Below, in pieces: positions 4,861 through 49,600 of a stretch of DNA of 64,000 nucleotides. Below the pieces are notes generated by a model. That model saw only the letters and a list, made by a program, of their open reading frames with translations, made no database searches and was not told the origin of the DNA. Numbering within the stretch: position 1 is the stretch's first letter; each line of letters opens with the position of its first letter. Origin of the DNA: Mytilus edulis (lineage: Eukaryota). Location of the stretch: positions 12,958,001 to 13,022,000 of the forward strand of contig NC_092348.1 of assembly GCF_963676685.1 (NCBI RefSeq), read 5' to 3'. A program made the position numbers and the translations under genes.

Positions 4861-7791
4861 TTAGACATTAGAAATTTTACTTGCTCTTTCTATGACAAGT
4901 AAATCAATTCCCTGTTCATCACTACTATGATAGAAACCAATAGATTGTTTCGGTGGTTCCCCTAACAGTACACCCGATTCATTTTCTAATGTTGTCATGA
5001 CAGCATCGTTGACCTTGTCGATAAGACGAGCCGTAACGCTGTGTGACTCGCCGACATTATCACTTCTATTTCGGTTTTCGTCGATATCAATATCATGTAT
5101 GTCCCAAGATTGGATATACTGGTCAATTTTTGCTTTGAAATTACTTTTAAAACTAAGATTGTTTGTATCTAACTCTAACGGGTCTCTTCCACTGAATAAA
5201 ACATTTTCGAACACCCATGGTAAAAGTCCACCAGCCAAGGTTGCCAACATTTGATTTGCACCTGATATATTATATTCATCACCAAAAGCTAACACAATAA
5301 GAACGACGAACATCAGGAATGCGCATATACACATAAATCGCCATACGGCGTGTATGATATTCGGAACGAGAGGGCCAGGTGCCCCGACGGTATCCATATA
5401 ACAAGTTGAAAAGAAAAACTTTTCTGTTAAATACGGTTGATCTTGTCGGTCTAAAAATAGAATTAGTTTTCGAATAGACCATTTTGGTATTCCATCTTTT
5501 GATACAATCAATCTCACATTTACGTCTTTTTTATTTTTCTGTTCATCACATTGACCATCTTCGTTTGCAGTTATCTGAAATGCAGTATTTTTCTGTTCTT
5601 CAAAACTGTCACTAGCAACTGCTTCAACCTGCGAGCGATTGTTTTCCACTATCAAACTATTTATTGTTTGATTAAATTTGAGATATTTTTCACCTATACC
5701 TTTAAAACAATTTCGCGCATAAAGACCAAGCATAAAAACTAGTGTAATGTACTTGAGCATGTCAGAAGAATTCATTATAATGCCTATGACTGTGTATAAA
5801 ATCATTTCAACGAAGAATATAATTGTTTCCATTGTTAACAGAACAAGGGCAAATATAGTAATCAAACACATCGGTAACACAAAAAGTTGCAAGAGTCTAT
5901 TTTTACAGGACACCGTTTCTCGTGTTTTGTCAGGTACGTTTTGCAGATGAAATAGGTCAAACATGAAACCACATCTCTTTTTACAGGAAATTAGAGCTTC
6001 TCTGTTACACATTCCTGACCATTGAGTTAGATAGGCTAAGAAATGCGCCAGTAGACGTACAGTAACGTTGATAGTTGGTACACAGTAAAAGGCTAAAGAT
6101 ATCATAATTATTGGAAAAGCAAATATGAAATAAAAAGGGTATATTATTAACCCAGCTATCCCACATATCTCGCATGGAATGAGCAGTTGAACAATTGAAC
6201 CTTTAATTTTGGCAATCTTCGAAATTTGACGCATATCCCTCATTGACCGTCTCATCAAAGATTGTAATTTCTTTTTAATTCTAGGGTTGACCAATGCAAA
6301 AACTATCACATCAGTTATAATAACGGCGTAGCAAAGTAAGAACATAGGATGAAGAGGTGTAAGAGTATATGTCAAACTCCATTTAAATGCTGGTAGAGTC
6401 AAATTCCGAACTTCCGCTGCTAGTTTCTGATCTGAAGCTTCCAAATCTTCATATTCATAGTAGAAATATACTCTGAGAGCCCAAGGAACGGATATGGCTA
6501 AAATCAGGAATAGCCTCATGGTCTGTCGAAGACATCTGTGCCATGGGTATTTTATTATGTCAACAGGTTGAATCGTACTTGTCTGCATCTCGTCCTCGGG
6601 CATCTTTTCGGTTTCTTCATCGATGTTAAGTTTCTGGGACTTTTTATCAAATAACCATTGAAACCCAAAAATGCTGCTTCTACAACACTTTTGAAAAGAT
6701 GGCGATTTTCGTATGTGACACTTTACAAATAAAGAATACACTACTTGTAAAATACCAACTGGTACATAATTTGACGGAACCAGTCTATCGTATCTAACAA
6801 CCATATCCAATTTTCGGAGAGATACAGTCACAACTTTGTTAACAGGGACCGTTTTCATTGTTTCATAAAATTTCTTTAATTTACAGACTCTATTCCACTC
6901 GAAAGAATCTTGCATGTTTTTAATCTGGTTCATTTCCACGATCGGTACATTTAAATAAGCTAATTTGGATTTGTCATCTTTTGTTATTTTTTTTATTCGA
7001 AGTTCAATCGGGTTTGACAGAATATGTTCATAGACAGTTTCTGTGTATTTCTTTCTGTACAGGGACGACGGTATGAGAAGCGGACAGAACATAAGCACAA
7101 GTATTTTGATTATGAAGATACATGTAAATAATATTTCCATCCAATAATCGCTCGATATATTCTTACATTCTAAATGTTCATTTGCTTTACTGTGACCATG
7201 CCAGCAGCATATGTATTTGAAAGCAACAACAGATTGTTCGTTTTTTACCTCTACATTACAGATCTTTTCATTTTCTACTTCATGATCGTCTTCAAGATTC
7301 ATTTTAAAGTCCATGACCAGTAGCCTTCGCAAATTGTCTTCAATGGTGGAGAAGTTATGCCTGGTAAGACACTGAGTTGGTGTCTGTTTCAACTTAACAT
7401 CAATATGTTCTGTGTTGAAGGAAAGTGTTGTGAGAGATAAGTGTTCAAACTGAGGACGGAGATAAAGCAGGCTCCGTCCATGTCTTCCATAAGTTCGAAT
7501 CCAGTCAAGTGGTTTATAAATATTCCCTTGATGGCTTTTAGATTCCAGACTCATGTGATCCTCAAATTTAAGATGAATGAATATTAGTTTCTTACCTTCA
7601 CTTAACATTAGGTTTAATTTGCTCCTCAATTCAGGATCCACTGGTTGTACTTTACAGTTCGGAATAAGTAATCCAACAGCAAATATAGTGTTATAGGGGT
7701 CACTCTCATTGTGGCCTGAATGTTTATGATTATCCTCTGTAAAACAGCATGTGAAGATACATAAAGACAGGAAAACAATAAATAATGTCAT
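4861..7791 (-). CDS. Uncharacterized multi-pass membrane protein, 976 aa, single coding exon
   Basis: Uninterrupted 2.9-kb ORF in AT-rich DNA. Hydrophobic N-terminal signal peptide (MTLFIVFLSLCIFTCCF), Cys-containing ectodomain of about 200 aa, then roughly 8-10 hydrophobic helices (e.g. WMEILFTCIFIIKILVLMFCPLLI, FMCICAFLMFVVLIVLAF). No family recognised. Confidence 0.85.
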   Translation of the reverse strand: MTLFIVFLSLCIFTCCFTEDNHKHSGHNESDPYNTIFAVGLLIPNCKVQPVDPELRSKLNLMLSEGKKLIFIHLKFEDHMSLESKSHQGNIYKPLDWIRTYGRHGRSLLYLRPQFEHLSLTTLSFNTEHIDVKLKQTPTQCLTRHNFSTIEDNLRRLLVMDFKMNLEDDHEVENEKICNVEVKNEQSVVAFKYICCWHGHSKANEHLECKNISSDYWMEILFTCIFIIKILVLMFCPLLIPSSLYRKKYTETVYEHILSNPIELRIKKITKDDKSKLAYLNVPIVEMNQIKNMQDSFEWNRVCKLKKFYETMKTVPVNKVVTVSLRKLDMVVRYDRLVPSNYVPVGILQVVYSLFVKCHIRKSPSFQKCCRSSIFGFQWLFDKKSQKLNIDEETEKMPEDEMQTSTIQPVDIIKYPWHRCLRQTMRLFLILAISVPWALRVYFYYEYEDLEASDQKLAAEVRNLTLPAFKWSLTYTLTPLHPMFLLCYAVIITDVIVFALVNPRIKKKLQSLMRRSMRDMRQISKIAKIKGSIVQLLIPCEICGIAGLIIYPFYFIFAFPIIMISLAFYCVPTINVTVRLLAHFLAYLTQWSGMCNREALISCKKRCGFMFDLFHLQNVPDKTRETVSCKNRLLQLFVLPMCLITIFALVLLTMETIIFFVEMILYTVIGIIMNSSDMLKYITLVFMLGLYARNCFKGIGEKYLKFNQTINSLIVENNRSQVEAVASDSFEEQKNTAFQITANEDGQCDEQKNKKDVNVRLIVSKDGIPKWSIRKLILFLDRQDQPYLTEKFFFSTCYMDTVGAPGPLVPNIIHAVWRFMCICAFLMFVVLIVLAFGDEYNISGANQMLATLAGGLLPWVFENVLFSGRDPLELDTNNLSFKSNFKAKIDQYIQSWDIHDIDIDENRNRSDNVGESHSVTARLIDKVNDAVMTTLENESGVLLGEPPKQSIGFYHSSDEQGIDLLVIERASKISNV

Positions 7792-14748: not shown

Positions 14749-17700
14749 TCATTTTGGATCAGTAAGAACGAGAGGAATGAGTTCAACAATTGGTCTTATG
14801 AATGAACTGGGTTTGTCGTCTCTAATAGTTCGAATTTCCACTTTTCGGATTTTCATGTCGGCACTGGGGAAAACTTTTGTTACTATTGCCATCGGCCACT
14901 GTGGTCTTGGTAACTCTTTGTCCCTCATGAGAACTATGTCTCCTATATTTAAGTCCTTTATCGGCAATTCCCACTTTTTCCTTACTTGAAGTGTATGTAA
15001 ATATTCTTTATTCCATTTTGACCAGAATTCATCTGCGAGTCCTTGAACCATCTTCCACTGACTACGTAGCATGTCCTTAGTTCCAAATTGTAGCATAGTT
15101 TGTTCATCCTGTCCTTTCTTGTGTGTTAAGAGCATAGACGGAGATAATACTTCCGGGTTATCCGGGTCAGTAGAGACAGATACTAACGGCCTTGAATTCA
15201 CAATAGCACTGACCTCTGCCATTAGAGTAACTAAAATTTCATGTGTGAGTCTATTTTTCTCACGAATGAGCATGCAATCTAAAATCCTTCTGCTTAAACC
15301 TATCATCCTTTCCCATGATCCACCAAAATGTGAAGCATGCGGAGGGTTGAATTTCCATATAGTTCCGTATTGTGATAGCATTATATCAACAGTGCCCTTT
15401 TCAATGAATTCAGCTGTGATTCCTAAATCTTGTATTGCACCAACAAAATTTGTTCCTCTATCTGATCAAATAAGTTTAACAGATCCTCTGATAGCAATGA
15501 AACGACGATATGCATTGATAAAACTGGCGCTACTCATTTCTTCTATGACTTCAATATGTATCGCTCTTGAAACCAAACATGTGAATAATATTGCCCATCT
15601 TTTCTGATTGATTGATGAGCCTCTAGTTTTTCTATGGATGATTTGGTATGGTCCAAAAGTATCGATTCCCACAAAGGTAAAGGGAGGTCCTGGAGTGAGT
15701 CTATCTTCCGGAAGGTCAGACATCTTTTGTACTTTAAACTGACCTCGCAATTTCTTACATGTGACACATTGTCTGATGATTGTAGAAACTAGCCTTTTAC
15801 TGCCTATAACCCAAAAGCCTCCTGAACACAAGGCTCCTTCAGTCATGTGTCTGCCTTGATGACATGTCAATTCATGATAGTGACGCGTCAGTAACACAGC
15901 TAAATGATGTTTCTTTGGAATAATTATTGGCTGAAGATGTAGCTCAACAGTTTTTGCATGTCGTATACGTCCACCAACTCTAAGAATATTATGTTTGTCT
16001 AACACAGGTGAAAGCGACAATAAATTTGACGTAGGAAGTAACTGACCAACGGAACTAATTGCATTGATATCGTTTGAAAATGCCTCTGCTTGCACTGTTT
16101 TGATGATAAATTGTTCCACTTCTTGTCGAGAAGGTGGACTCTCTTGATGTAACTTTCTAATAAAGGCTTTAAGAAACTGAATAGCTCTCACTAGACTTTT
16201 CCAAGATGCAAGTCGCGAAAACCTGCTTGACAATCCTACCTCCTCATTAATGTCAGTTTTATTAGTAACTACAGACGGACGGACTTCTTTATCATCATTT
16301 GGATCGACAAGTGGATACATTTGTTTTCCAATATCTGAATCTTGACTCAAGAATGTTGGTCCCTGCAGGTAGACTGAACTGGGTAAATCTACAGTATTAA
16401 GGCTTCTTGTTGCTACATCTGCTGGATTCAGATCAGTTGAAATGTAGCTCCATTGGCTAGGAGAACTTGATGTTCTTATTCGGTTAACTCGGTTGCTCAC
16501 ATAAACATAAAATCTACGTGTTTCATTAGTTAAGTAACCTAAAACGACCTTACTGTCAGTATAAAAATGAAAACAAGTCGAGTCTAATTTGAGGTGTTCT
16601 TTCAAAGTATCTGCAATCTCGACGGAAAGGACAGCTGCACATAACTCTAAACGCGGAATTGTGTGGCCGTGTACTGGCGACACTTTAGCTTTGCCCATCA
16701 GAAAGGAGACTTCACTTTTATTCTCACCAAACAATTTCAAATAAGCCACAGATGCTATCGCGTCCTTTGACGCATCACTGAATACATGAACCTCCAAATG
16801 TGTAGAGTTTAAAAATGATATATCTGAATATCTACGTGGTATTTGTAAGTTTTGAAGATGAACCAATGAGGATACCCAATTTTCCCATCTTAATTTCAAA
16901 TGATCAGGGAGATCTTCATCCCAATTTGCAGGTCCAGATTCTGACATCATCTCTCGGAGAATTAGTTTTCCATTCATTGTAATTGGAGACGCAAACCCAA
17001 TAGGGTCAAATATGCTATTAATGACCGACAATGCACCTCTGCGAGTGTACGGCTTTTTCTCTGAAGACACTTTGAATGTAAATTGATCGACAGAAATGTC
17101 CCATGAAAGTCCTAAGCTGCGTTGTACAGGAGGAGTTTCAGATCCAAGGTCCAGGTCCTTGAGGTCCGAAGATAAGTCTTCTGATGGAAAGCTTTGAAGA
17201 ACGGCTTTACTATTCGACACAAATTTATGGAGTCGCAATCCACCACCATCTACAAGAGCCTTTTGAGTTCGCTTCATAAGGTCAACTGCGGACTCAACAT
17301 CTGGGCATGACATCAACCCATCATCAACATAAAAGTTGTTATAAACAAAGTCCTGAATGTCATTATCTGCATTTTGCACTGCTCTCCTTAAACAATATGT
17401 GGCAACAGAGGGAGAAGGGCTATTCCCAAAAACATGTACAGTCATTCTGTAATCAATAAGAGGGCGATGAACTTCATTGTTTTCATGCCATACAAAACGC
17501 AAATAGTCTCTATGTGAATCTGTTACCTTAAAGTTGTAAAACATTTGTTCTACGTCTGCTGTCACAGCTACAGCCTCTTTACGGAATCTAAGTAAAACAC
17601 CTAATAAATTGTTTGTTAGATCTGGACCTTTTATTAAGACATCATTCAATGAAGTTCCGCTAAACTTAGCTGACGAATCAAAAACAATTCTCACTTTTCC

Positions 17701-20235
17701 AGGTTTTTTTGGATGATATACCCCAAAAAAGGGAAGATACCAACATTCATTTCCTATGGGTAGATTTGGTGCCTTCTCAGCATGTTTGTTCACAAACATC
17801 TTATTCATGAATTCAAGTATATGCTCTTTTTTGTTAGGGTTCATGCGAAGACTACGTTCCAACGAATTAACTCTCTGCACTGCTTGTACTCTATTATTAG
17901 GCAACACAGGTCTGTCTTTGCGAAACGGAAGAGGTGCAGTCCACCGATTATCTGACCCTTGTTTCACTTTAGAATCCATCAATTCTATAAATAGTTTGTC
18001 CTCGATTGAAGGTCCAATAGTTTCATCGTAAGGTGTTCTCTCAAAGATAAATTCAGGTTTTACAGTAAAAGCATTTGCACAAGGTTGAAAATGAGAGGTG
18101 CGTCCATCTGGCAAAATAAAAGTTTTGTTTACAGTTACAGTTTCAGTTCGATGAATCTGACCGAGACAAGATTCTCCTACGATCACCCACCCTAATGGCA
18201 ACTTTTGAGCATAGGGCAAGTTGTCACCTCCCAAGCGTTGATCAAGAACGTGATGGGCTTGAATCACATCTCTACCAATAAGTAATTCAATTTTGATATT
18301 CTGGTCAATGGGTGGTATGTGCGACGCTATGTTGTTAAGATGATCATGACTAGCTGCCACTTCTGGTGATGGTATCTCATCACGGTTGTTTGGTATGTCG
18401 TTGCATTCAATTAGTGATGGAATGTTTATAGAAGTACTATGATCTAACGCTTCAATTGTATAATGTCTTGCTACTCTACCCATTGTAGATACTTTGCCTG
18501 AGCATGATGCTAATGTAAAATTTATATGTTCAGCATTCTCATTAAATATATCGAAAAACTTTGATGTACCTAATGAATGAGTACTTTGATCATCTATGAT
18601 TGCATATACTTTCTGAGCCATGTGTGTTTTATTTTTTGGATAAACATAAATTGGCAAAATCTTAGCACAAGACTTGCTACTACTTAACGGATTTCCACAA
18701 ATCTTTGTACAAATAGCTGATACATGTGATAGGTTATTAAGCTCCCCTTCGTGAATCTTCTCACTTTCACAGTCATTTACAGATTGAGAGCCGTTATATG
18801 GATCTATGTTTTGGTCTTGTTGGTAAATGTGTAAAGCTGTTGGATGATTTGAACTTTTACAAATATTACAATGTATGTTTTCTCTACAGCTTCTTTGTAA
18901 ATGTTTCTGAAGACTGCAGCAACGAAAGCAAAGCCTGTTTTTCTTTAACAAGTCCATACGTTCAGTCATTGGCTTTTGACGGAAAGCTCTACATTCATTG
19001 AGATCGTGATTTGTGCCATGAATAGGACAAACTTGCTTTTCATCTATTGTGTATACATCAGTTTTTCTAGTAGATACACGCAAATTAGATTGCATACTAG
19101 CAGGATTAGAAGTTTTATTTGTCTGCGGAGCAAACTGAAAACTCGGATCTGTACGCCATTTTGCCATGTCATAAGTAAAGTCAACAAAGAATGAGAATGG
19201 CGGGTACAACATATTGTGCCTTTTCTTGTATTTAATAGCTTCTGTTGACCATTTTTCCTGTAAGTTATGAGGAAGACAATTTACGATCTGATTAACGCCA
19301 GTTGAGGAGTCATAATAAGCGAGAACTTGTGAATATTGTGGATTGTTTTTAACAAATTGGATTTCACATAATATGTCATATAGTTCATACAGGCGTTCAT
19401 AATCTTTGGCAGTATTGCTTAACTTCGGAAAGTTAGCAAGTTTGGTTTTTAAGCATTGCTCAATCAATTCTGGACTTCCATACCGAACATCCAATCGGTC
19501 CCAAATTTTGTGTAAACCACCAACATGATCACTAGCACTGGCAGCTTTGATACTTTCTGCTTGTCTTGCTGAATCTGGACCAAGCCATTTTATGAGAAGA
19601 TCCAACTCTTCTGAAGGAGTCACACTAAGTTCTTTCATAACATCTTTAAATGTCTCTTTCCAAGATAGGAACTGAAATGGGCTATCATTGTATTTGATAA
19701 GTCGTGATAAAACAATATCCTTCCGAGCCATCATCTTTGTGATCAAATTACACAGTTCCATTTGTGAATTATTGTTGTTAACATTAGGAGGCACATATGG
19801 TGTCGATGTATTTGCATATGCGCTAAGTTGTGGAGATTGCTTTTCTGGTGTATTCACTATTGCAATTGGTTTTGTATCTAGTATATGTAGATTTTGAACA
19901 TATTCTTTTGTTCGTTCTTTTTGAAATTCAGATACAGAGTCTAGATCGTCATCCTCTCCTACCATGGACTCATTTTCCAATATCCTGATCTCTGACTCCA
20001 ACACCTCAGTCTCTTCTTTAATCTGAAGGATACTTAATTCTGCCTCTAGGGCAGCCTTTTGTCTTATAAGACTAGCCTGTTTTGCACTGTATTTAACCTT
20101 CGTCTCTAATTGTGCTTTTTTTCTTAATATATCAGATTTACTTGATAAGTGACTGTGATTTGAAACTGAACGACTCGGTTTTATCTGAGTGAAGTCTATC
20201 TGTTCATGCTGTTTTAGTTCTCGGTAGGTTGCCAT
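14749..20235 (-). pseudogene. BEL/Pao Gag-Pol polyprotein (~1828 codons) with one in-frame TGA at 15466-15468
   Basis: Three Gag Cys/His knuckles (CPIH...C, CFRCC...H...C, CNIC...H...H), protease AIIDDQS, RT FYVDD, RNase H FSDAS and TIPRLELCAA, integrase HHCC, GIDTFGP, *SDRGTNF and GGSWERM. ORFs 15466-20262 and 14749-15381 are in the same frame. Confidence 0.93.
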
Positions 20236-20262
20236 TGTCACAACTGGTCGAAGCTTTTTCAC

Positions 20263-24900: not shown

Positions 24901-25648
24901 AAGAAATAAAAGCAGTCTTAATACGTTCTCCAAATTCAACCTTTCGTCTGGTAGACAGCCTTATTTGTCAAACTTGCTCGATTTTAAGTTTGCAAGGTTA
25001 AAATTGTTAGCACGAACAAATTGCCTACCCATATATCAAGTTTTGTATAGAATGAATATGTCCGAGACTACCATTTGTCAAATGTGTTCATGCAAATCTG
25101 AGGAGTCCGTGGAACATGTCGTTCTCGGATGTTCTGAATATTCTCCTAAACCATGTATACGAAGTTAGTATTTTCCCGATATAAATGAGTACCTAAGTAC
25201 TAACTTCCCCGCCTTTTGCTTCACAGAGTTACCGTCCTACGAAAAAATAAACATACTGCTAGGTGAATGTTTTTATAAGGTTGATCCAAATGTTTGTAAA
25301 CATGTTGACACTTTTAGTAAAAAGATGCTGAGTGAAATGTACACTTACAGATCTTCAATTTTAGAAGATTAAGCTAACTGTGATTTACGTGTGCAGATAT
25401 CAGAAGGCAGCTTAATCGGTGTGATCTCTAAATGTTGAGATTTTATATTAATATATAATGTTGTTATGTTTTACATGAATGTTGACTTGTTTTAAAAGAG
25501 AATTAATTTTTAACTTTGATATTGTCCTATGTGTATTTTATTTAATTGTAAATTATTCATTGTATATGCTCTTAGACGCATTTGTGGGTACCCTGCCTAC
25601 AAGTGCCCCGTTGTAAAGGGGTAGTTTCTTAATAAATATATATATATA
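21950..25648 (+). mobile_element. Decayed, internally deleted non-LTR retrotransposon (CR1/L2-group-like)
   Basis: ORF1 remnants from ATG 22333 with a PHD finger (CICN...WCRDWFHEKC...WVCSVC) and an SGNH/esterase-like segment (MGSLIIRDI...CVRG...IQVGSN). These join directly to the RT C-terminal half (GLKQGYVLSPALFS, degenerate ADD motif, LKFNQNKSKVM, YKYLGV) and a C-terminal CQMC...ESVEHVVLGC finger. 3' stem-loop, AATAAA and (TA)n tail. Many stops and frameshifts; boundaries approximate. Confidence 0.8.
23025..23180. repeat. Insertion of short palindromic repeats (ttaacgcgttaa) splitting the LINE PHD finger
   Basis: About six acgcgttaa-like palindromes interrupt the DMIR / WCRDWFH coding continuity. 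Confidence 0.7.
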
Positions 25649-27548
25649 TAACATTGTTGGGTTGATGTTTAGACGAGTTGTATATACATTATGTACACAG
25701 CCATGTATCACCATCATTGATGGCGATCCGATGGACACATCTGTTGTAGGGTTGTCACTGACTCAGACGTACTTATGAATATAATTATTTTCTGTGACTG
25801 TATCTTACATTAATTTGTAGGATCCTTTACTATAGATAATTTAGCTGATCTGTAACAATAACATCTTCATGCCTTATATATATCATGTACTGCAGTACGC
25901 CGCTAGATTAAAACTGACGTGGAAAGGTAACACACGGCCAGCGAAAGCTCTATTTTTTAGAGCCCAGGTGGTCGTGTGGTCTAGCGGGACGGCTGCAGTG
26001 CAGGCGATTTGGTGTCACGATATCACAGTAGCATGGGTTCGAATCCCGGCGAGGGAAGAACCAAAAATTTGCGAAAGCAAATTTACAGATCTAACATTGT
26101 TGGGTTGATGTTTAGACGAGTTGTATATACATTATGTACACAGCCATGTATCACCATCATTGATGGTGATCCGATGGACACATCTGTTGTAGGGTTGTCA
26201 CTGACTCAGACGTACTTTTGAATATTATTATTTTCTGTGACTGTATCTTACATTAATTTGTAGGATCCTTTACTATAGATAATTTAGCTGATCTGTAACA
26301 ATAACATCTTCATGCCTTATATATATCATGTACTGCAGTACGCCGCTAGATTAAAACTGACGTGGAAAGGTAACACACGGCCAGCGAAAGCTCTATTTTT
26401 AAGAGCCCAGGTGGTCGTGTGGTCTAGCGGGACGGCTGCAGTGCAGGCGATTTGGTGTCACGATATCACAGTAGCATGGGTTCGAATCCCGGCGAGGGAA
26501 GAACCAAAAATTTGCGAAAGCAAATTTACAGATCTAACATTGTTGGGTTGATGTTTAGACGAGTTGTATATACATTATGTACACAGCCATGTATCACCAT
26601 CATTGATGGTGATCCGATGGACACATCTGTTGTAGGGTTGTCACTGACTCAGACGTACTTTTGAATATTATTATTTTCTGTGACTGTATCTTACATTAAT
26701 TTGTAGGATCCTTTACTATAGATAATTTAGCTGATCTGTAACAATAACATCTTCATGCCTTATATATATCATGTACTGCAGTACGCCGCTAGATTAAAAC
26801 TGACGTGGAAAGGTAACACACGGCCAGCGAAAGCTCTATTTTTAAGAGCCCAGGTGGTCGTGTGGTCTAGCGGGACGGCTGCAGTGCAGGCGATTTGGTG
26901 TCACGATATCACAGTAGCATGGGTTCGAATCCCGGCGAGGGAAGAACCAAAAATTTGCGAAAGCAAATTTACAGATCTAACATTGTTGGGTTGATGTTTA
27001 GACGAGTTGTATATACATTATGTACACAGCCATGTATCACCATCATTGATGGCGATCCGATGGACACATCTGTTGTAGGGTTGTCACTGACTCAGACGTA
27101 CTTATGAATATAATTATTTTCTGTGACTGTATCTTACATTAATTTGTAGGATCCTTTACTATAGATAATTTAGCTGATCTGTAACAATAACATCTTCATG
27201 CCTTATATATATCATGTACTGCAGTACGCCGCTAGATTAAAACTGACGTGGAAAGGTAACACACGGCCAGCGAAAGCTCTATTTTTAAGAGCCCAGGTGG
27301 TCGTGTGGTCTAGCGGGACGGCTGCAGTGCAGGCGATTTGGTGTCACGATATCACAGTAGCATGGGTTCGAATCCCGGCGAGGGAAGAACCAAAAATTTG
27401 CGAAAGCAAATTTACAGATCTAACATTGTTGGGTTGATGTTTAGACGAGTTGTATATACATTATGTACACAGCCATGTATCACCATCATTGATGGCGATC
27501 CGATGGACACATCTGTTGTAGGGTTGTCACTGACTCAGACGTACTTAT
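25649..27548 (+). repeat. Tandem array of a 443-bp unit (4 units + 128 bp) flanked by (TA)n
   Basis: Unit starts taacattgttggg at 25649, 26092, 26535, 26978 and 27421; about 99% identical; (TA)n on both sides. Confidence 0.98.
25959..26400 (+). ncRNA. Putative ~440-nt structured Pol III RNA with tRNA-like head (further copies 26402-26843, 26845-27286; partial 27288-27548)
   Basis: A-box-like TGGTCGTGTGG (25969-25979), perfect B-box GGTTCGAATCC (26036-26046), T5 run at 26396-26400, extensive 5'/3' complementarity with G-U pairs. Confidence 0.55.
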
Positions 27549-27829
27549 ATATATATATATGTATATATTAGTTCTGTTACATAGCATTTCTAGAGTCGGG
27601 GTAATTTAGAGCCGACTGACTACTATATATATGTAGCTCTTTGTTCATTGTTGAAAACTGTATGTATTAACATAATAGATCTATAATTAACCAAGCAGTG
27701 TCATAATAATACTTATGATAAACATTTGCATTTTTGTTATTATGATCTTTTTTCATAATGCAAATAATATCACAATAAGATATTAATTTGGTTCTTAACG
27801 CTTTATTTCGTTAACGGAAAACCGTAACG

Positions 27830-46633: not shown

Positions 46634-49600
46634 TCAGTTATTTACTTTCATCCTTGGAAGCCTCCTCATGGCATAATGATCATCAGCTTCGTATGTGCTT
46701 TTCCTCTTCAAACTTAAAAAGAGATACGAATATATATTCCAGACAATAATAATACATGTCTAAAGGACAGAAGCGTGCACCTACAGTCGAAGTACTCCTC
46801 TGTATACATGTATATTGAAATTATGTACATGATTCAAGTATTTATTTTTCAAAATAACAAATAAACATTTCTTTTTAATTACTAAAATGGTTAGAAATAT
46901 AAGATGGTATTATATATGGCATAATGGGCAATAAAGGGACAAAGATGTATTTAAATAAGGGTTTTAGCTGAAATAAAATACTCTTGAAACATAGGGATCA
47001 CATTGGTGTATTCCATAACCTTTTAATATTCAATTGTACACCGAAAATCATCATCATCACTACATGTCAAAATTAAAAACAATTATAATAGTAGCTTAAT
47101 ATGCTGTACGGATGTTTTGGATCAGAATATGATATACAGTCATGTAGACATGAGTCTTGCGTACCAGATGATAAGTCTGGTACTATTGATGGTTGTTTTA
47201 CTTACAAACCATAATATATCTTATTCATCATACACGTTTTATATAAATCCTCAAGTATTTATACTTATTTGGCGTTCAAGTGTTTATTTCCGAGCGCTCA
47301 TAACCACCTGTTAAGAAAACATATACCACGTCAGTATATGACAGTTGATTTTTACTAGTTCCATTGGTGATAACGTCTGGTTTTTTTTTATGGACGTCTC
47401 CGTTTGAATACAACATAGACTTAATGTTTTGGGTCCTTTTCTATAATATCTCAATACAGATTTATAAAATAATCAATATTAAAAAAAAAAAAATATTCAT
47501 TGAAATAATCATTGAAATTTATTTTTTGTACATAACTTACCGACTATTGTTATTCTTCACATAACAATTAACAATAAAACCAACAATGAACAGGATAACT
47601 ACACTACCAATAGATCCCAGTAGTATCAAACCAAGTTTACTGGACGACTTCTCGGCATTAGATGGTTTGTCGACCTTTATTATACACACTGTAAGTAGAC
47701 AATGATTGCAAAGGCATACAGTACGTACTTTGTAGGTACGTTGAAATTGTATGAGGAAATCAATGGCATCAAAATTTTGAATTAACTACTGATTATGTCA
47801 GACCAATGTTTTCTGAGAACACGTTTAATAACTTGTTTCATAAATTTAAATCTCAGCAGATAACTAGTCTTTAAACAAAAAGCTGACAGATTTTTAAAAC
47901 GTTATGTTAATTGATATTTGGAAAAAACGTAATTTTTTTCAAAGATTATAGATGAACTCATTTGTCGTATCTGCATTCCGCCTACTGTTGGTTCTGCATT
48001 GATTTGTTAAGCTGTTGCTTCGTGCTATTTGATTATGGTATAAGATTGCTTCTTCGTATCCTTTTATTCGTTTATAATTACGATTTCATTTTGTTACAAT
48101 GTAGAATGAATATTAAGAAATATCTAGAACTTATATGATACACATGCGCACATGTGTTTCTGTAAAAAAAAGTACTAGCATATTTAAAGCACAGAAGCTT
48201 AAACTATTTTAAAGGTAAACATAAATATTATATTATTTACAAGATACAACAAATAATTAAAGATTAAAAAACAAGATTATGATCGATTTTATTCGATAAT
48301 TGCATCGTATAAACCAATAAGTAAGATATTAAAACTAGAGGCTCTCAAGAGCCTGTGTCGCTCACCTTGGTCTATCAGCATATCAAACAAAGGACACTCT
48401 ATAACATTGTAGACGAGAATATATTATAACAATTTTCTCTTTTTTTAATTTGCTGAGGATTTAAACAAAAAATTATCAAACATTTACCTTGAAGGAGAAT
48501 AACTTCTAATGGGGTTAATTGACCATTTTTATCATTTGACTTATTTGTCATAATGTACCCTAATTTGTACCAACATTAAAACCTTTGATTTTTCAACTCT
48601 TTATACCACAACTCCACATAATTAACTTAAAGCTCGACTGAAAGAACTCGTAAGCTTATGTTTCTTTAACAAAAAGGACTCTAAACGTTTTAAACATATA
48701 GTTTTGGGGAGGAATTCAGCTTATTTTGTGAAAAATCATTCAGAGTCAAGCAAAAAATACACCAAAGAGGATATCACTGCCATGCTGGACTTTTTAATTG
48801 ACAACATATTTGTTGAATTTGGAGGTTTGGTCTTCATTCAGACTATTGGAATCCCTATGAGTACCAATTGCGCTCCTCTACTTGCAGATTTGTTTTTGTA
48901 TTCCTATGAAGCAGAATTTATCCAAGGGCTTGTACAGAAAGGAGAAAAGAAATTAGCCCAGTCTTTTAATTTCACCTTTCGGTATATTGATGATGTACTG
49001 TCTCCTAATAATATTAATAGATCCAGTGATCACTTACATTTAATATATCCAAGTGAACTTGATACTACCGACACAGATAAATCTGCTTCATATTTAGACA
49101 TTTTTCTCGAAATGACTACTGATGGTAAGTTAGATACCAAAATTTATGACAAAAGCGATGATTTTAATTTTCCTATAGTCAATTTTCAATTTCTGTGTAG
49201 CAACATCCCAGCGGCACCAGTATATGGAGTATAAGTGTCTTAATTGATACGTTCCTTTAGAGCTAGCTTAAAGTATGTTGATTTTGTTGAACGAGGAATA
49301 CTGATTTCTCAAAAGTTGCTCAGACAGGACTAAGAATTATTCAAATTAAGGTCATCACTCGAGAAATGTTTCGGTTGCCATCATGAGCTGATTGGCCATT
49401 ATGACAAAAGTGTGTAAAAAATCATATCTGATATGCTTCTTGAGTCATATTAACCTTCCATCTTTACCGAACTGAACAAAGAAATTACACGACGGGTGCC
49501 GTATACGGTAGGACATGCTTTCACTCACGGTTTTTAGTGGAGTTCGTGTTGTTTCTTATTTATTGTTTGTAACTGTTGATGTAAATGTCTTTTGGTTTTA

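What the first reader, a model, noticed from the sequence alone, without database searches (positions are those of the whole stretch)
25636..27568. Array is inserted in a (TA)n tract, is circularly permuted relative to its RNA, and carries its own (TA)4T loop
Seen: both flanks are (TA)n. The array has A-B-A-B-A-B-A-B-A architecture with a 128-bp terminal redundancy, and neither end coincides with the promoter or terminator. Each unit contains TATATATAT (e.g. 26318-26326), which lies unpaired between two helices of the predicted fold. Established: some Penelope-like elements insert as partial-tandem arrays into (AT)n microsatellites, and retrozyme arrays are attributed to reverse transcription of circular RNA. 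Inference: a non-autonomous RNA is copied by rolling or template-jumping reverse transcription, perhaps by the Penelope-like RT family seen in this window. The UA loop could act as a target-pairing guide for (TA)n sites.
Basis: partly seen in the sequence, partly recalled or inferred. Interest (0 to 1): 0.78.

Follow-up and report, generated by a model that had tools for sequence, protein, structure and literature searches.

The report
Mobile tandem repeat targeting (TA)n tracts
This 443-base tandem repeat is one copy of a transcribed, non-coding mobile element that has copied itself through RNA into thousands of (TA)n microsatellites of a mussel-type genome, in the manner of Penelope-like retrotransposons but without their ribozyme.

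Summary
There are 4.3 copies of a 443-bp unit (window 25649-27545). They sit between the only two (TA)>=5 tracts in the 64-kb window.

It is not a single-locus repeat. The window's own 3' junction (...CAGACGTACTT|(AT)n) occurs 537 times in the genome. A second, commoner 3' junction (...GACGAGTTG|(TA)n) occurs 2004 times. Reversed-pattern controls gave 0.

In 40 fetched loci the 3' ends fall at these two sites (55 of 70). The 5' ends are scattered over the whole unit, so 'taacattg' is not a fixed end. Head-to-head inverted pairs are frequent, and three have identical or near-identical arms.

RNA reads cover the whole unit on one strand only. No ribozyme or tRNA model matches.

These features are the insertion signature described for Penelope-like elements (PLEs). 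PLE copies lie beside the arrays far more often than chance would give. No PLE sharing the element's 3' end was found.

A circular RNA template was not tested.

Notes s1-834660 and s1-835463 of this scan describe the same family elsewhere in this genome.

The parts
25636..25650 (.). Left (TA)n tract that abuts the 5' end of the array
   Evidence: It is one of only two (TA)>=5 tracts in the window.
25649..27545 (+). The insertion: 4 full 443-bp units (25649-26091, 26092-26534, 26535-26977, 26978-27420) plus a partial fifth (27421-27545). The 5' end is at unit position 1-3 and the 3' end at unit position about 125 (class B).
27546..27560 (.). Right (TA)n tract joined to the 3' end ...CAGACGTACTT. 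This is the primer side in the proposed mechanism.
   Evidence: The same junction occurs 537 times in the genome.
26092..26129 (+). Tail module A (unit 1-38), ...TTTAGACGAGTTG-TATATA. It is the commonest 3' end of the family (class A) and lies inside the array in this window.
   Evidence: 2004 junctions to (TA)n; 2944 internal copies; 40 of 70 sampled 3' ends.
26203..26220 (+). Tail module B (unit about 112-129), ...CTCAGACGTACTT-(A/T)T.... This is the second 3' end site and the one used by this array.
   Evidence: 15 of 70 sampled 3' ends.
26318..26326 (+). It is partly unpaired in the fold and almost never a 3' junction.
   Evidence: (at most 5 junctions genome-wide).
26331..26391 (+). Inverted partial copy of the head (unit about 240-300). 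It pairs with the head in the predicted RNA fold.
   Evidence: MFE -140 kcal/mol, z -5.05; head versus reverse complement, z 4.5, 0 of 1000 shuffles as good.
26390..26406 (+). Hairpin GCTCT-ATTTTTA-AGAGC with the T-run in its loop (unit 299-315). It is a putative weak Pol III stop. RNA reads run through it.
   Evidence: depth about 400-600 across it; identical within arrays.
26420..26489 (+). Head: A-box-like TGGTCTAGCGG (26420-26430) and B-box-like GGTTCGAATCC (26479-26489), starts 59 nt apart. It looks tRNA-derived but is not a tRNA.
   Evidence: Sequence; the box consensus is recalled, not computed. ARAGORN found 0 genes. No Rfam tRNA match.
25407..25632 (+). Neighbouring element: the 3' end of a different dispersed repeat that also ends at this (TA)n tract.
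   Evidence: at least 44 genome matches, with a common 3' end and variable 5' starts.

Best explanation
The array is one insertion of a high-copy, non-coding, non-autonomous retroelement with a 441-443-bp unit.

Proposed mechanism, with the status of each step:
1. The element is transcribed in sense from its own sequence. It carries tRNA-type A and B box motifs. (RNA on one strand is shown; the promoter and the polymerase are inferred.)
2. The RNA template has no fixed ends, so it is concatemeric or circular. (Inferred.)
3. A DNA 3' end inside a (TA)n microsatellite pairs with a short UA run. That run lies just after one of two AGACG-containing tail modules, at unit 33-38 or unit about 123-129. 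(The junctions are shown; the pairing is inferred.)
4. A reverse transcriptase supplied in trans copies the RNA backwards for anything from 0.1 to 15 units and stops at an arbitrary point. (Fixed 3' ends and scattered 5' ends are shown.)
5. Often the other DNA end primes a second, inverted copy. (Head-to-head pairs with identical arms are shown.)
6. [quoted passage not shown] (Inferred from the insertion style and from co-location.)

The window's array is a 4.3-unit product that used the second tail site. Units 2 and 3 later arose from a local duplication.
For: - Copy number: the unit gives 224 matches, with 868 first-look candidates of which 40 were scored, on all large contigs at 97-99% identity.
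- Exact genome counts: class A junction 2004, class B junction 537, internal form 2944, all reversed-pattern controls 0.
- Sample: 40 loci and 74 segments. 3' ends are class A in 40, class B in 15, class C in 1 and other in 14 of 70.
- A TA tract of at least 10 nt sits at the junction in 39 of 40 class A ends and 12 of 15 class B ends.
- 5' ends are spread over the unit (71 ends).
- There are 11 head-to-head pairs, always with the 3' ends outward. The arms differ at 0/443, 0/443 and 1/443 positions in three of the 10 pairs compared. Only 0.8% of 1313 random array pairs show 0 differences.
- Units within an array differ by 1.6 positions on average, against 9.0 between arrays. Array-private variants are fixed in every unit of an array.
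- RNA: X22 and X23 laid 4578 and 5831 reads. First mate on the minus strand outnumbers plus by about 20-100 fold in the high-depth bins (e.g. 1176 vs 10). Depth is zero in the unique flanks. Reads cross the T-run and run from unit 38 into (TA)n.
- PLE link, literature: Craig et al. 2021 describe 5' truncation, partial tandems, an adjacent inverted 5'-truncated copy and a (TA)n bias, with no hammerhead in the Naiad clade of PLEs.
- PLE link, flanks: RT/GIY-YIG ORFs were the only RT-bearing ORFs among the 10 longest flank ORFs of 22.
- PLE link, adjacency: PLE 3' ends abut the same (TA)n tracts in L041 and L064.
- PLE link, co-location: 5 of 8 PLE endonuclease loci on C1 below 54.3 Mb have a class A junction within 2.2 kb; chance is about 1-3% each.
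- PLE link, chimera: in L069 a 3'-cut PLE runs straight into a 2.1-unit array on the same strand. That junction is unique in the genome.
Against: - No autonomous element sharing the tail was found. The 3' UTRs of four PLE copies (L041, L064, L068, L069/L070) show no significant similarity to the unit. The best case is z 4.1 on an AT-rich 26-mer, matched or beaten by 1 of 300 shuffles.
- Target-site duplications cannot be read.
- The 5' flank has no TA tract in 8 of 22 simple insertions. The TA tract is longer at the 3' side (mean 22 vs 8 nt, p 1.3e-4). Part of the TA may therefore be the element's own tail rather than target.
- The RNA strand call assumes the usual library chemistry and I could not calibrate it.
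- The main sample of 40 loci came from the best full-unit BLAST matches and is biased to long arrays. The 12-locus junction sample left out 7 of the first 19 listed sites.
- Array lengths have a heavy tail (two 15-unit arrays) that a single constant fall-off rate would not give.
- tRNA origin rests on box motifs recalled from knowledge. No tRNA model matches.
Confidence: 0.7

Rival explanations
1. It is an ordinary tRNA-derived SINE with a (TA)n tail, mobilised by a LINE. The tandem arrays arose afterwards by unequal crossing-over.
For: - A head with A and B box motifs plus a short tail ending in a microsatellite is the classic SINE layout.
- Bivalve SINEs with tandem and palindromic arrangements are reported (PMC11481361, passages read).
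- 5' ends at unit 311-313, about 16-18 nt before the A box, are over-represented: 4 against 0.48 expected, p 0.0014.
- Units 2 and 3 of the window array show that local unit duplication does happen.
Against: - There is no dominant full-length 5' end. The 11 independent short insertions sampled at class A junctions start at 37, 130 (twice), 215, 220, 232, 321, 333, 365, 379 and 385.
- Sequence beyond the 170-nt 'SINE' part is copied seamlessly.
- Head-to-head pairs with identical multi-unit arms need multi-unit templates at the time of insertion.
- No LINE ORF was seen among the 10 longest flank ORFs, while PLE ORFs were.
Confidence: 0.13
2. It is DNA-level spread. Either a satellite-like repeat is dispersed by circular DNA and rolling-circle replication into fragile (TA)n sites, or it is carried by Helitron/Helentron-type or MITE carriers, as described for oyster and clam repeats.
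For: - Bivalve satDNA-like arrays carried by Helentrons and MITEs are known (PMC7492417 and PMC3879986, search listing and abstract starts only).
- Helitrons insert at A|T, which a (TA)n tract offers (recalled).
- Units within an array are identical.
Against: - One end is fixed and the other scattered. A cut-and-paste or Helitron mechanism would not give this.
- No shared carrier sequence flanks the arrays in an all-against-all comparison of the masked flanks.
- Polarity is strict, with 3' ends outward in all 11 inverted pairs.
- Sense-strand RNA is abundant.
Confidence: 0.05
3. It is the same retroelement, but the template is specifically a unit-length circular RNA copied round and round (rolling reverse transcription), as proposed for retrozymes.
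For: - Arrays of 15 identical units exist (L064: 0 differences; L065: at most 2).
- Array-private variants, including in the T-run, are present in every unit.
- The L064 and L067 variants occur elsewhere only as one or two units per site: 13 hits at 12 other places, and about 33 at about 28 places. No second long array that could have been the source is in the assembly.
- RNA is continuous across the T-run.
- The RNA fold is stable (z -5.05).
Against: - No ribozyme or other known cutting or joining device is present.
- Reads running from unit 38 into (TA)n and varied flanks show that linear read-through transcripts exist.
- On a tandem reference, a circle cannot be told from a concatemer.
- The long arrays could themselves be the sources of the short copies and could have grown in place.
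Confidence: 0.3

Closest known systems
Non-autonomous derivatives of Penelope-like elements (e.g. MRC1 of Chlamys elements in Chlamydomonas; Craig et al. 2021, PMC8557442, passages read)
   Same: - Non-coding.
- Multicopy head-to-tail insertions.
- 5' truncation.
- Adjacent inverted 5'-truncated copies.
- Microsatellite target: (TA)n is the target named for the Naiad clade of PLEs.
   Different: - The described ones share their 3' ends with an autonomous PLE. No such partner was found here.
- This element has a tRNA-type box head and two alternative internal 3' end sites.
Metazoan non-LTR retrozymes (reviewed in PMC7761336, passages read; Li et al. 2026 bioRxiv 10.64898/2026.07.22.740005, abstract and introduction read)
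   Same: - Tandem non-coding units.
- Abundant RNA.
- A stable self-paired fold.
- Thought to ride on PLEs.
- Reported in a Mytilus species.
   Different: - Retrozymes are defined by a type I hammerhead in each unit and have units of about 150-300 bp.
- This unit is 443 bp and has no hammerhead core on either strand.
tRNA-derived SINEs of bivalves (PMC11481361, passages read)
   Same: - A and B box motifs.
- Short length of most copies.
- A microsatellite at the 3' end.
- Some tandem and palindromic arrangements.
   Different: - No fixed 5' end.
- No readable target-site duplication.
- No LINE-like tail identified.
- Multi-unit seamless arrays present at insertion.
Helentron- or MITE-carried satDNA-like arrays of oysters and clams (PMC7492417, PMC3879986; search listing only)
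   Same: Short arrays of a few hundred bp per unit, scattered over all chromosomes of a bivalve, sometimes next to a microsatellite.
   Different: Those arrays sit inside a DNA transposon with conserved flanking modules. Here there is no carrier, and the ends have the polarity of reverse transcription.

Membership tests
Metazoan non-LTR retrozyme | Tandem repeat units transcribed into abundant RNA | tested here: met
Metazoan non-LTR retrozyme | Type I hammerhead ribozyme in every unit | tested here: not met
   No Rfam ribozyme at E<=1 over 3.2 kb or at E<=10 over a dimer. No CUGANGA...GAAA core on either strand. Caveat: Rfam also missed the PLE hammerheads that I read by eye in L041 and L064.
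Metazoan non-LTR retrozyme | Unit-length circular RNA | not testable with these tools
   Reads on a tandem reference cannot tell a circle from a concatemer.
PLE-mobilised non-autonomous element | Frequent 5' truncation with a constant 3' end | tested here: met
PLE-mobilised non-autonomous element | Partial or multiple head-to-tail copies, and an inverted 5'-truncated copy adjoining the 5' end | tested here: met
   11 head-to-head pairs. Three of the 10 compared have identical or near-identical arms.
PLE-mobilised non-autonomous element | Microsatellite target, (TA)n for Naiad-type PLEs | tested here: met
   PLE 3' ends lie on the same tracts.
PLE-mobilised non-autonomous element | 3' end similar to that of an autonomous PLE of the same genome | tested here: inconclusive
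   Four PLE 3' UTRs were compared and none is significant. The genome has at least 858 GIY-YIG candidates, so most families were not examined.
tRNA-derived SINE | tRNA-related head with A and B boxes | tested here: inconclusive
   The box motifs are present by eye. ARAGORN and the Rfam tRNA model find nothing.
tRNA-derived SINE | Defined 5' end at the Pol III start, and target-site duplications | tested here: not met
   5' ends are scattered. Only 4 of 71 lie at unit 311-313, and none of the 11 short copies does. No TSD beyond TA.
Helitron/Helentron-carried tandem repeat | Conserved carrier termini on both sides of the array | tested here: not met
   No shared sequence directly flanks the arrays. 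5' ends are variable.

The most novel reading that the evidence does not exclude
The family is a ribozyme-free counterpart of animal retrozymes. It is an RNA with a tRNA-type promoter and no fixed ends (circular or concatemeric), copied by a Penelope-like reverse transcriptase. The start point is set by pairing of a (TA)n DNA end with a UAUAUA box placed just after an AGACG tail module. That would be an internal template alignment reminiscent of telomerase, the sister lineage of PLE enzymes. Part of the 3' (TA)n tract may be made by repeated copying of that box.
Probability: 0.3. Interest if true: 0.8.

Novelty: new variant of a known kind. Interest (0 to 1): 0.6.

Why it matters
- With more than 2,500 dated insertion junctions, the family is a natural read-out of how Penelope-like reverse transcription starts, stops, switches templates and makes tandem and inverted copies. 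Craig et al. 2021 call that mechanism unresolved.
- It shows that satellite-like arrays scattered over bivalve chromosomes can arise by retrotransposition and not only on DNA transposons.
- It shows that the hammerhead is not needed for a tandem, PLE-style non-coding parasite.
- It marks (TA)n microsatellites as a shared landing site that several families stack onto.

Tried and rejected
- tRNA gene or pseudogene: ARAGORN at default and relaxed settings, and Rfam on the head alone, found nothing credible.
- Known ribozymes: none.
- Weak snoZ103 hit at 25296-25388: 27 bits against a gathering score of 44. It lies outside the array and I set it aside.
- Coding potential: the longest ORF per unit is 79 aa and there is no endless frame. 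Not followed further.
- Bacterial promoter/terminator scan: not meaningful for this genome.
- Partner search by sequence: the unit against one full PLE (L068) and the 3' UTRs in L041, L064 and L069/L070 gave nothing significant.
- Homology of the two tail modules to each other: not significant (z 1.5, 101 of 1000 shuffles as good). The shared AGACG box stands as an observation only.
- Target-site duplications: not above the cross-paired control.
- End-to-end template jumps at every unit: rejected, because the T-run junction is identical within arrays.
- A Pol III unit-length RNA as the only template: rejected, because reads cross the T-run and 5' ends are scattered.
- L064:8230-8938, as a possible PLE arm head-to-head with the 15-unit array: no clear homology, so left open.
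- RNA 'begin/end' pile-ups at 27252, 27523 and 25712: I take them for mapping effects of variant clusters and array edges, not RNA ends.
- Empty-site alleles: not tested, because the one read-laying run went to RNA.
- Literature searches for this family found no description. The searches were: PLE + microsatellite + hammerhead + tandem; Mytilus + SINE + tRNA-derived + tandem; PLE + non-autonomous + tRNA + SINE; Naiad + mussel; two 22-24-nt strings of the head; Mytilus satellite terms.
- Supplementary files were not opened. The PLE and retrozyme sequence supplements of Craig et al. 2021 and of the retrozyme papers could hold this family or its partner.
- The original retrozyme paper on Mytilus (reference 42 of PMC7761336) was not read.
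- The organism name is taken from earlier notes and was not verified.
Full report
WHAT IS THERE

Window 25649-27545 holds 4.3 head-to-tail copies of a 443-bp unit at 99% identity. It lies between two (TA)n tracts, 25636-25650 and 27546-27560. These are the only (TA)>=5 tracts in the 64-kb window.

The array begins at unit position 1-3 (TAACATTG...) and ends at unit position about 125 (...CAGACGTACTT). Each unit carries these features, read from the sequence:
- a hairpin with a T-run in its loop (unit 299-315);
- an A-box-like and a B-box-like motif, starts 59 nt apart (unit 329 and 388; the consensus is recalled);
- a TATATATAT run (unit 227-235).

ARAGORN finds no tRNA. Rfam finds neither a tRNA nor any ribozyme. 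There is no hammerhead core on either strand. The longest ORF per unit is 79 aa.

The unit RNA folds well: MFE -140 kcal/mol, z -5.05, and 0 of 100 shuffles fold as well. The main reason is that unit 240-300 is an inverted partial copy of the head (z 4.5, 0 of 1000 shuffles).

IT IS A DISPERSED FAMILY

The genome has 1.37 Gb in 2368 contigs; earlier notes call it a blue mussel, which I did not verify. The unit gives 224 matches, from 40 scored candidates out of 868, on all large contigs at 97-99% identity.

Exact pattern counts over the whole genome, all with reversed-pattern controls of 0:
- 2004 junctions ...GACGAGTTG joined to (TA)6 (class A, unit 33-38);
- 537 junctions ...CTCAGACGTACTT joined to (AT)5 (class B, the window's own end);
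- 2944 internal copies of the class A site.

Most insertions are therefore shorter than two units.

I also took 12 class A junction sites from the first 19 listed. L079 and L080 are duplicates, so 11 are independent. The copies are 104-459 bp long and start at unit 37, 130, 130, 215, 220, 232, 321, 333, 365, 379 and 385. By my reading of the printed flanks, 8 of the 11 have a TA-rich 5' flank.

ENDS AND ARRANGEMENT

I fetched 40 loci with flanks and resolved 77 segments. I kept 74 after dropping L043, which duplicates L061, and a distant relative in L033.

Of 70 usable 3' ends:
- 40 are class A;
- 15 are class B;
- 14 are elsewhere, several of them in complex nests.

A TA tract of at least 10 nt sits at the junction in 39 of 40 class A ends and 12 of 15 class B ends.

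The 71 usable 5' ends cover the whole unit. There is a moderate excess in unit 293-443 among arrays of at least one unit (28 of 51 against 17.4 expected, p 0.002). There is a small peak at 311-313 (4 against 0.48 expected, p 0.0014). 'TAACATTG' is not a recurrent 5' end.

In 22 simple insertions the 3' TA tract averages 22 nt. The 5' tract averages 8 nt and is absent in 8 (p 1.3e-4). Target-site duplications cannot be told from TA.

Eleven pairs lie head to head, always with the 3' ends and their TA tracts outward. In 3 of the 10 pairs compared the arms differ at 0, 0 and 1 of 443 positions. Only 0.8% of 1313 random pairs of arrays are identical. Neighbours that face tail to tail across a TA tract mostly differ by about 5% (four of six; the other two by 1-1.6%) and are most simply read as separate events.

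UNITS WITHIN ARRAYS

In 160 full units from 54 segments, units of one array differ by 1.6 positions on average (median 1). Different arrays differ by 9.0 (median 7). One 15-unit array has no difference at all.

Several arrays carry private variants in every unit, including in the T-run. This argues against a separate end-to-end template jump at each unit.

The variants of the 15-unit array (L064) and the 11-unit array (L067) occur elsewhere only singly or in twos: 13 further hits at 12 places, and about 33 at about 28 places. So no second long array with the same variant is in the assembly. That fits either a unit-length template copied many times or long arrays that are the sources of short copies. 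I cannot decide between these.

In the window, units 2 and 3 share three private changes. This points to a later local duplication.

RNA

Two raw-read RNA runs of the same coded organism as the best DNA-holding run (X1) laid 4578 and 5831 reads, from about 6% of each run. First mates on the minus strand outnumber those on the plus strand by about 20-100 fold in the high-depth bins (for example 1176 against 10, and 1472 against 26). With the usual library chemistry the RNA is therefore the plus strand. That is the sense of the boxes and the sense required by the insertion polarity. I could not calibrate the chemistry.

Depth is 300-1400 over the whole unit and zero in the unique flanks. Reads cross the T-run at depth about 400-600. 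At unit 38, 19-42 reads run on into (TA)n and varied flanks. Reads prefer units 1 and 4, which look like the family at large, over units 2 and 3 (all).

DNA contamination or random read-through would not give one strand, so the family drives or stabilises its own sense RNA.

DNA runs under four coded organism labels hold the repeat.

WHICH ENZYME

Craig et al. 2021 (PMC8557442; passages read) describe the following for Penelope-like elements:
- heavy 5' truncation;
- partial tandems;
- an inverted 5'-truncated copy next to the 5' end;
- a microsatellite bias, (TA)n for the Naiad clade, which also lacks hammerheads;
- non-coding derivatives with multicopy head-to-tail insertions.

All of these traits are met here.

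The genome holds many PLE copies: 150 GIY-YIG matches over the cut-off from 858 candidates. One full copy (L068) has an RT with a C-terminal GIY-YIG domain.

In the 98.7 kb of flanks of my loci, I scanned the 10 longest of 22 ORFs of at least 110 aa. The only RT-bearing ones are of PLE type, in L041 and L064. L004 has a tblastn match to the PLE protein.

In L041 and L064 a PLE 3' UTR ends on the very (TA)n tract that holds an array's 3' end. Each UTR carries what I read by eye as a minimal hammerhead. Rfam did not call either of them.

On contig C1 below 54.3 Mb, 5 of 8 PLE endonuclease loci have a class A junction within 2.2 kb. Local site density gives about 1-3% each. This is my own comparison of the coordinates listed.

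In L069 a PLE cut inside its 3' UTR runs directly, on the same strand, into a 2.1-unit array that ends in (TA)12. The junction is unique in the genome. The other six copies of that UTR continue differently. The sequence beyond the array is not the rest of the UTR. The simplest reading is one cDNA that switched from the family RNA to a PLE RNA, but it is a single case.

Against the PLE link, no PLE 3' end resembles the unit.

Both used sites lie 4-7 nt after an AGACG box. A distant relative of the unit in L033 ends ...TTCAGAC-TTATATATA.

Pairing with TA is therefore not enough. Something upstream of the start point matters. That part is inference.

VERDICT

The finding is real, and its core reading (an RNA-copied, (TA)n-seeking, PLE-style non-coding parasite) stands. 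The fixed 5' end and the loop-as-guide do not stand. The circular template remains open.

Among known things it is nearest to non-autonomous PLE derivatives and to retrozymes. It fails the defining hammerhead test of retrozymes, and it fails the fixed-5'-end test of SINEs. I file it as a new variant of a known kind.

I found no description of it in the papers searched (supplements not seen).

Two earlier reports of this scan, seen after my own analysis, reached the same reading on other copies. They are therefore not independent support, and the family is not new to the scan.

Noticed in passing
window 25407-25632: The DNA directly left of the array's (TA)n is the 3' end of another dispersed repeat. 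It has at least 44 genome matches (85 candidates). Most end at the same base before (TA)n and start at variable points, and some are in head-to-head pairs. This is a second family with the same insertion style.
   Followed up: partly
L033:2586-2810: A roughly 225-bp relative of the unit (about 70% identity over unit 255-423). It has the same box motifs, a T-loop hairpin kept by changed bases, and a tail ending ...TTCAGAC-TTATATATA in (TA)n. This hints at a wider superfamily.
   Followed up: no
L007, L035, L036, L037, L046, L049, L063 (flanks): A repeat of about 250 bp lies within 1.5 kb of arrays in 7 of 39 loci. A regex/by-eye hammerhead core (CUGAUGA, 4-bp helix II, GAAA) was found in three of them (L007, L046, L063). 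It may be the known mussel retrozyme or a PLE pseudo-LTR. Rfam was not run on these loci.
   Followed up: partly
L069 (G000:C1:27777150-27779050), minus strand: A PLE endonuclease end and about 520 nt of 3' UTR are joined inside the UTR to a 2.1-unit array on the same strand. The junction is unique in the genome and shows a short similar stretch at the switch point.
   Followed up: yes
window 14749-20262, minus strand: A BEL/Pao-type LTR retrotransposon ORF of 1598 aa (Peptidase_A17, integrase zinc domain) and a DUF5641 ORF.
   Followed up: no
window 4861-7791, minus strand: An uninterrupted 976-aa ORF with many hydrophobic stretches and no Pfam match.
   Followed up: no
window 48569-49210: A weak match to a PLE reverse transcriptase (23% identity over 225 aa, E 2.5e-4 against a small database). 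The overlapping 176-aa ORF has no Pfam hit.
   Followed up: partly
G000:C1, 25.0-29.4 Mb: About 30 of the first 100 listed class A junctions fall in this 4.4-Mb stretch, so insertions are clustered regionally.
   Followed up: no
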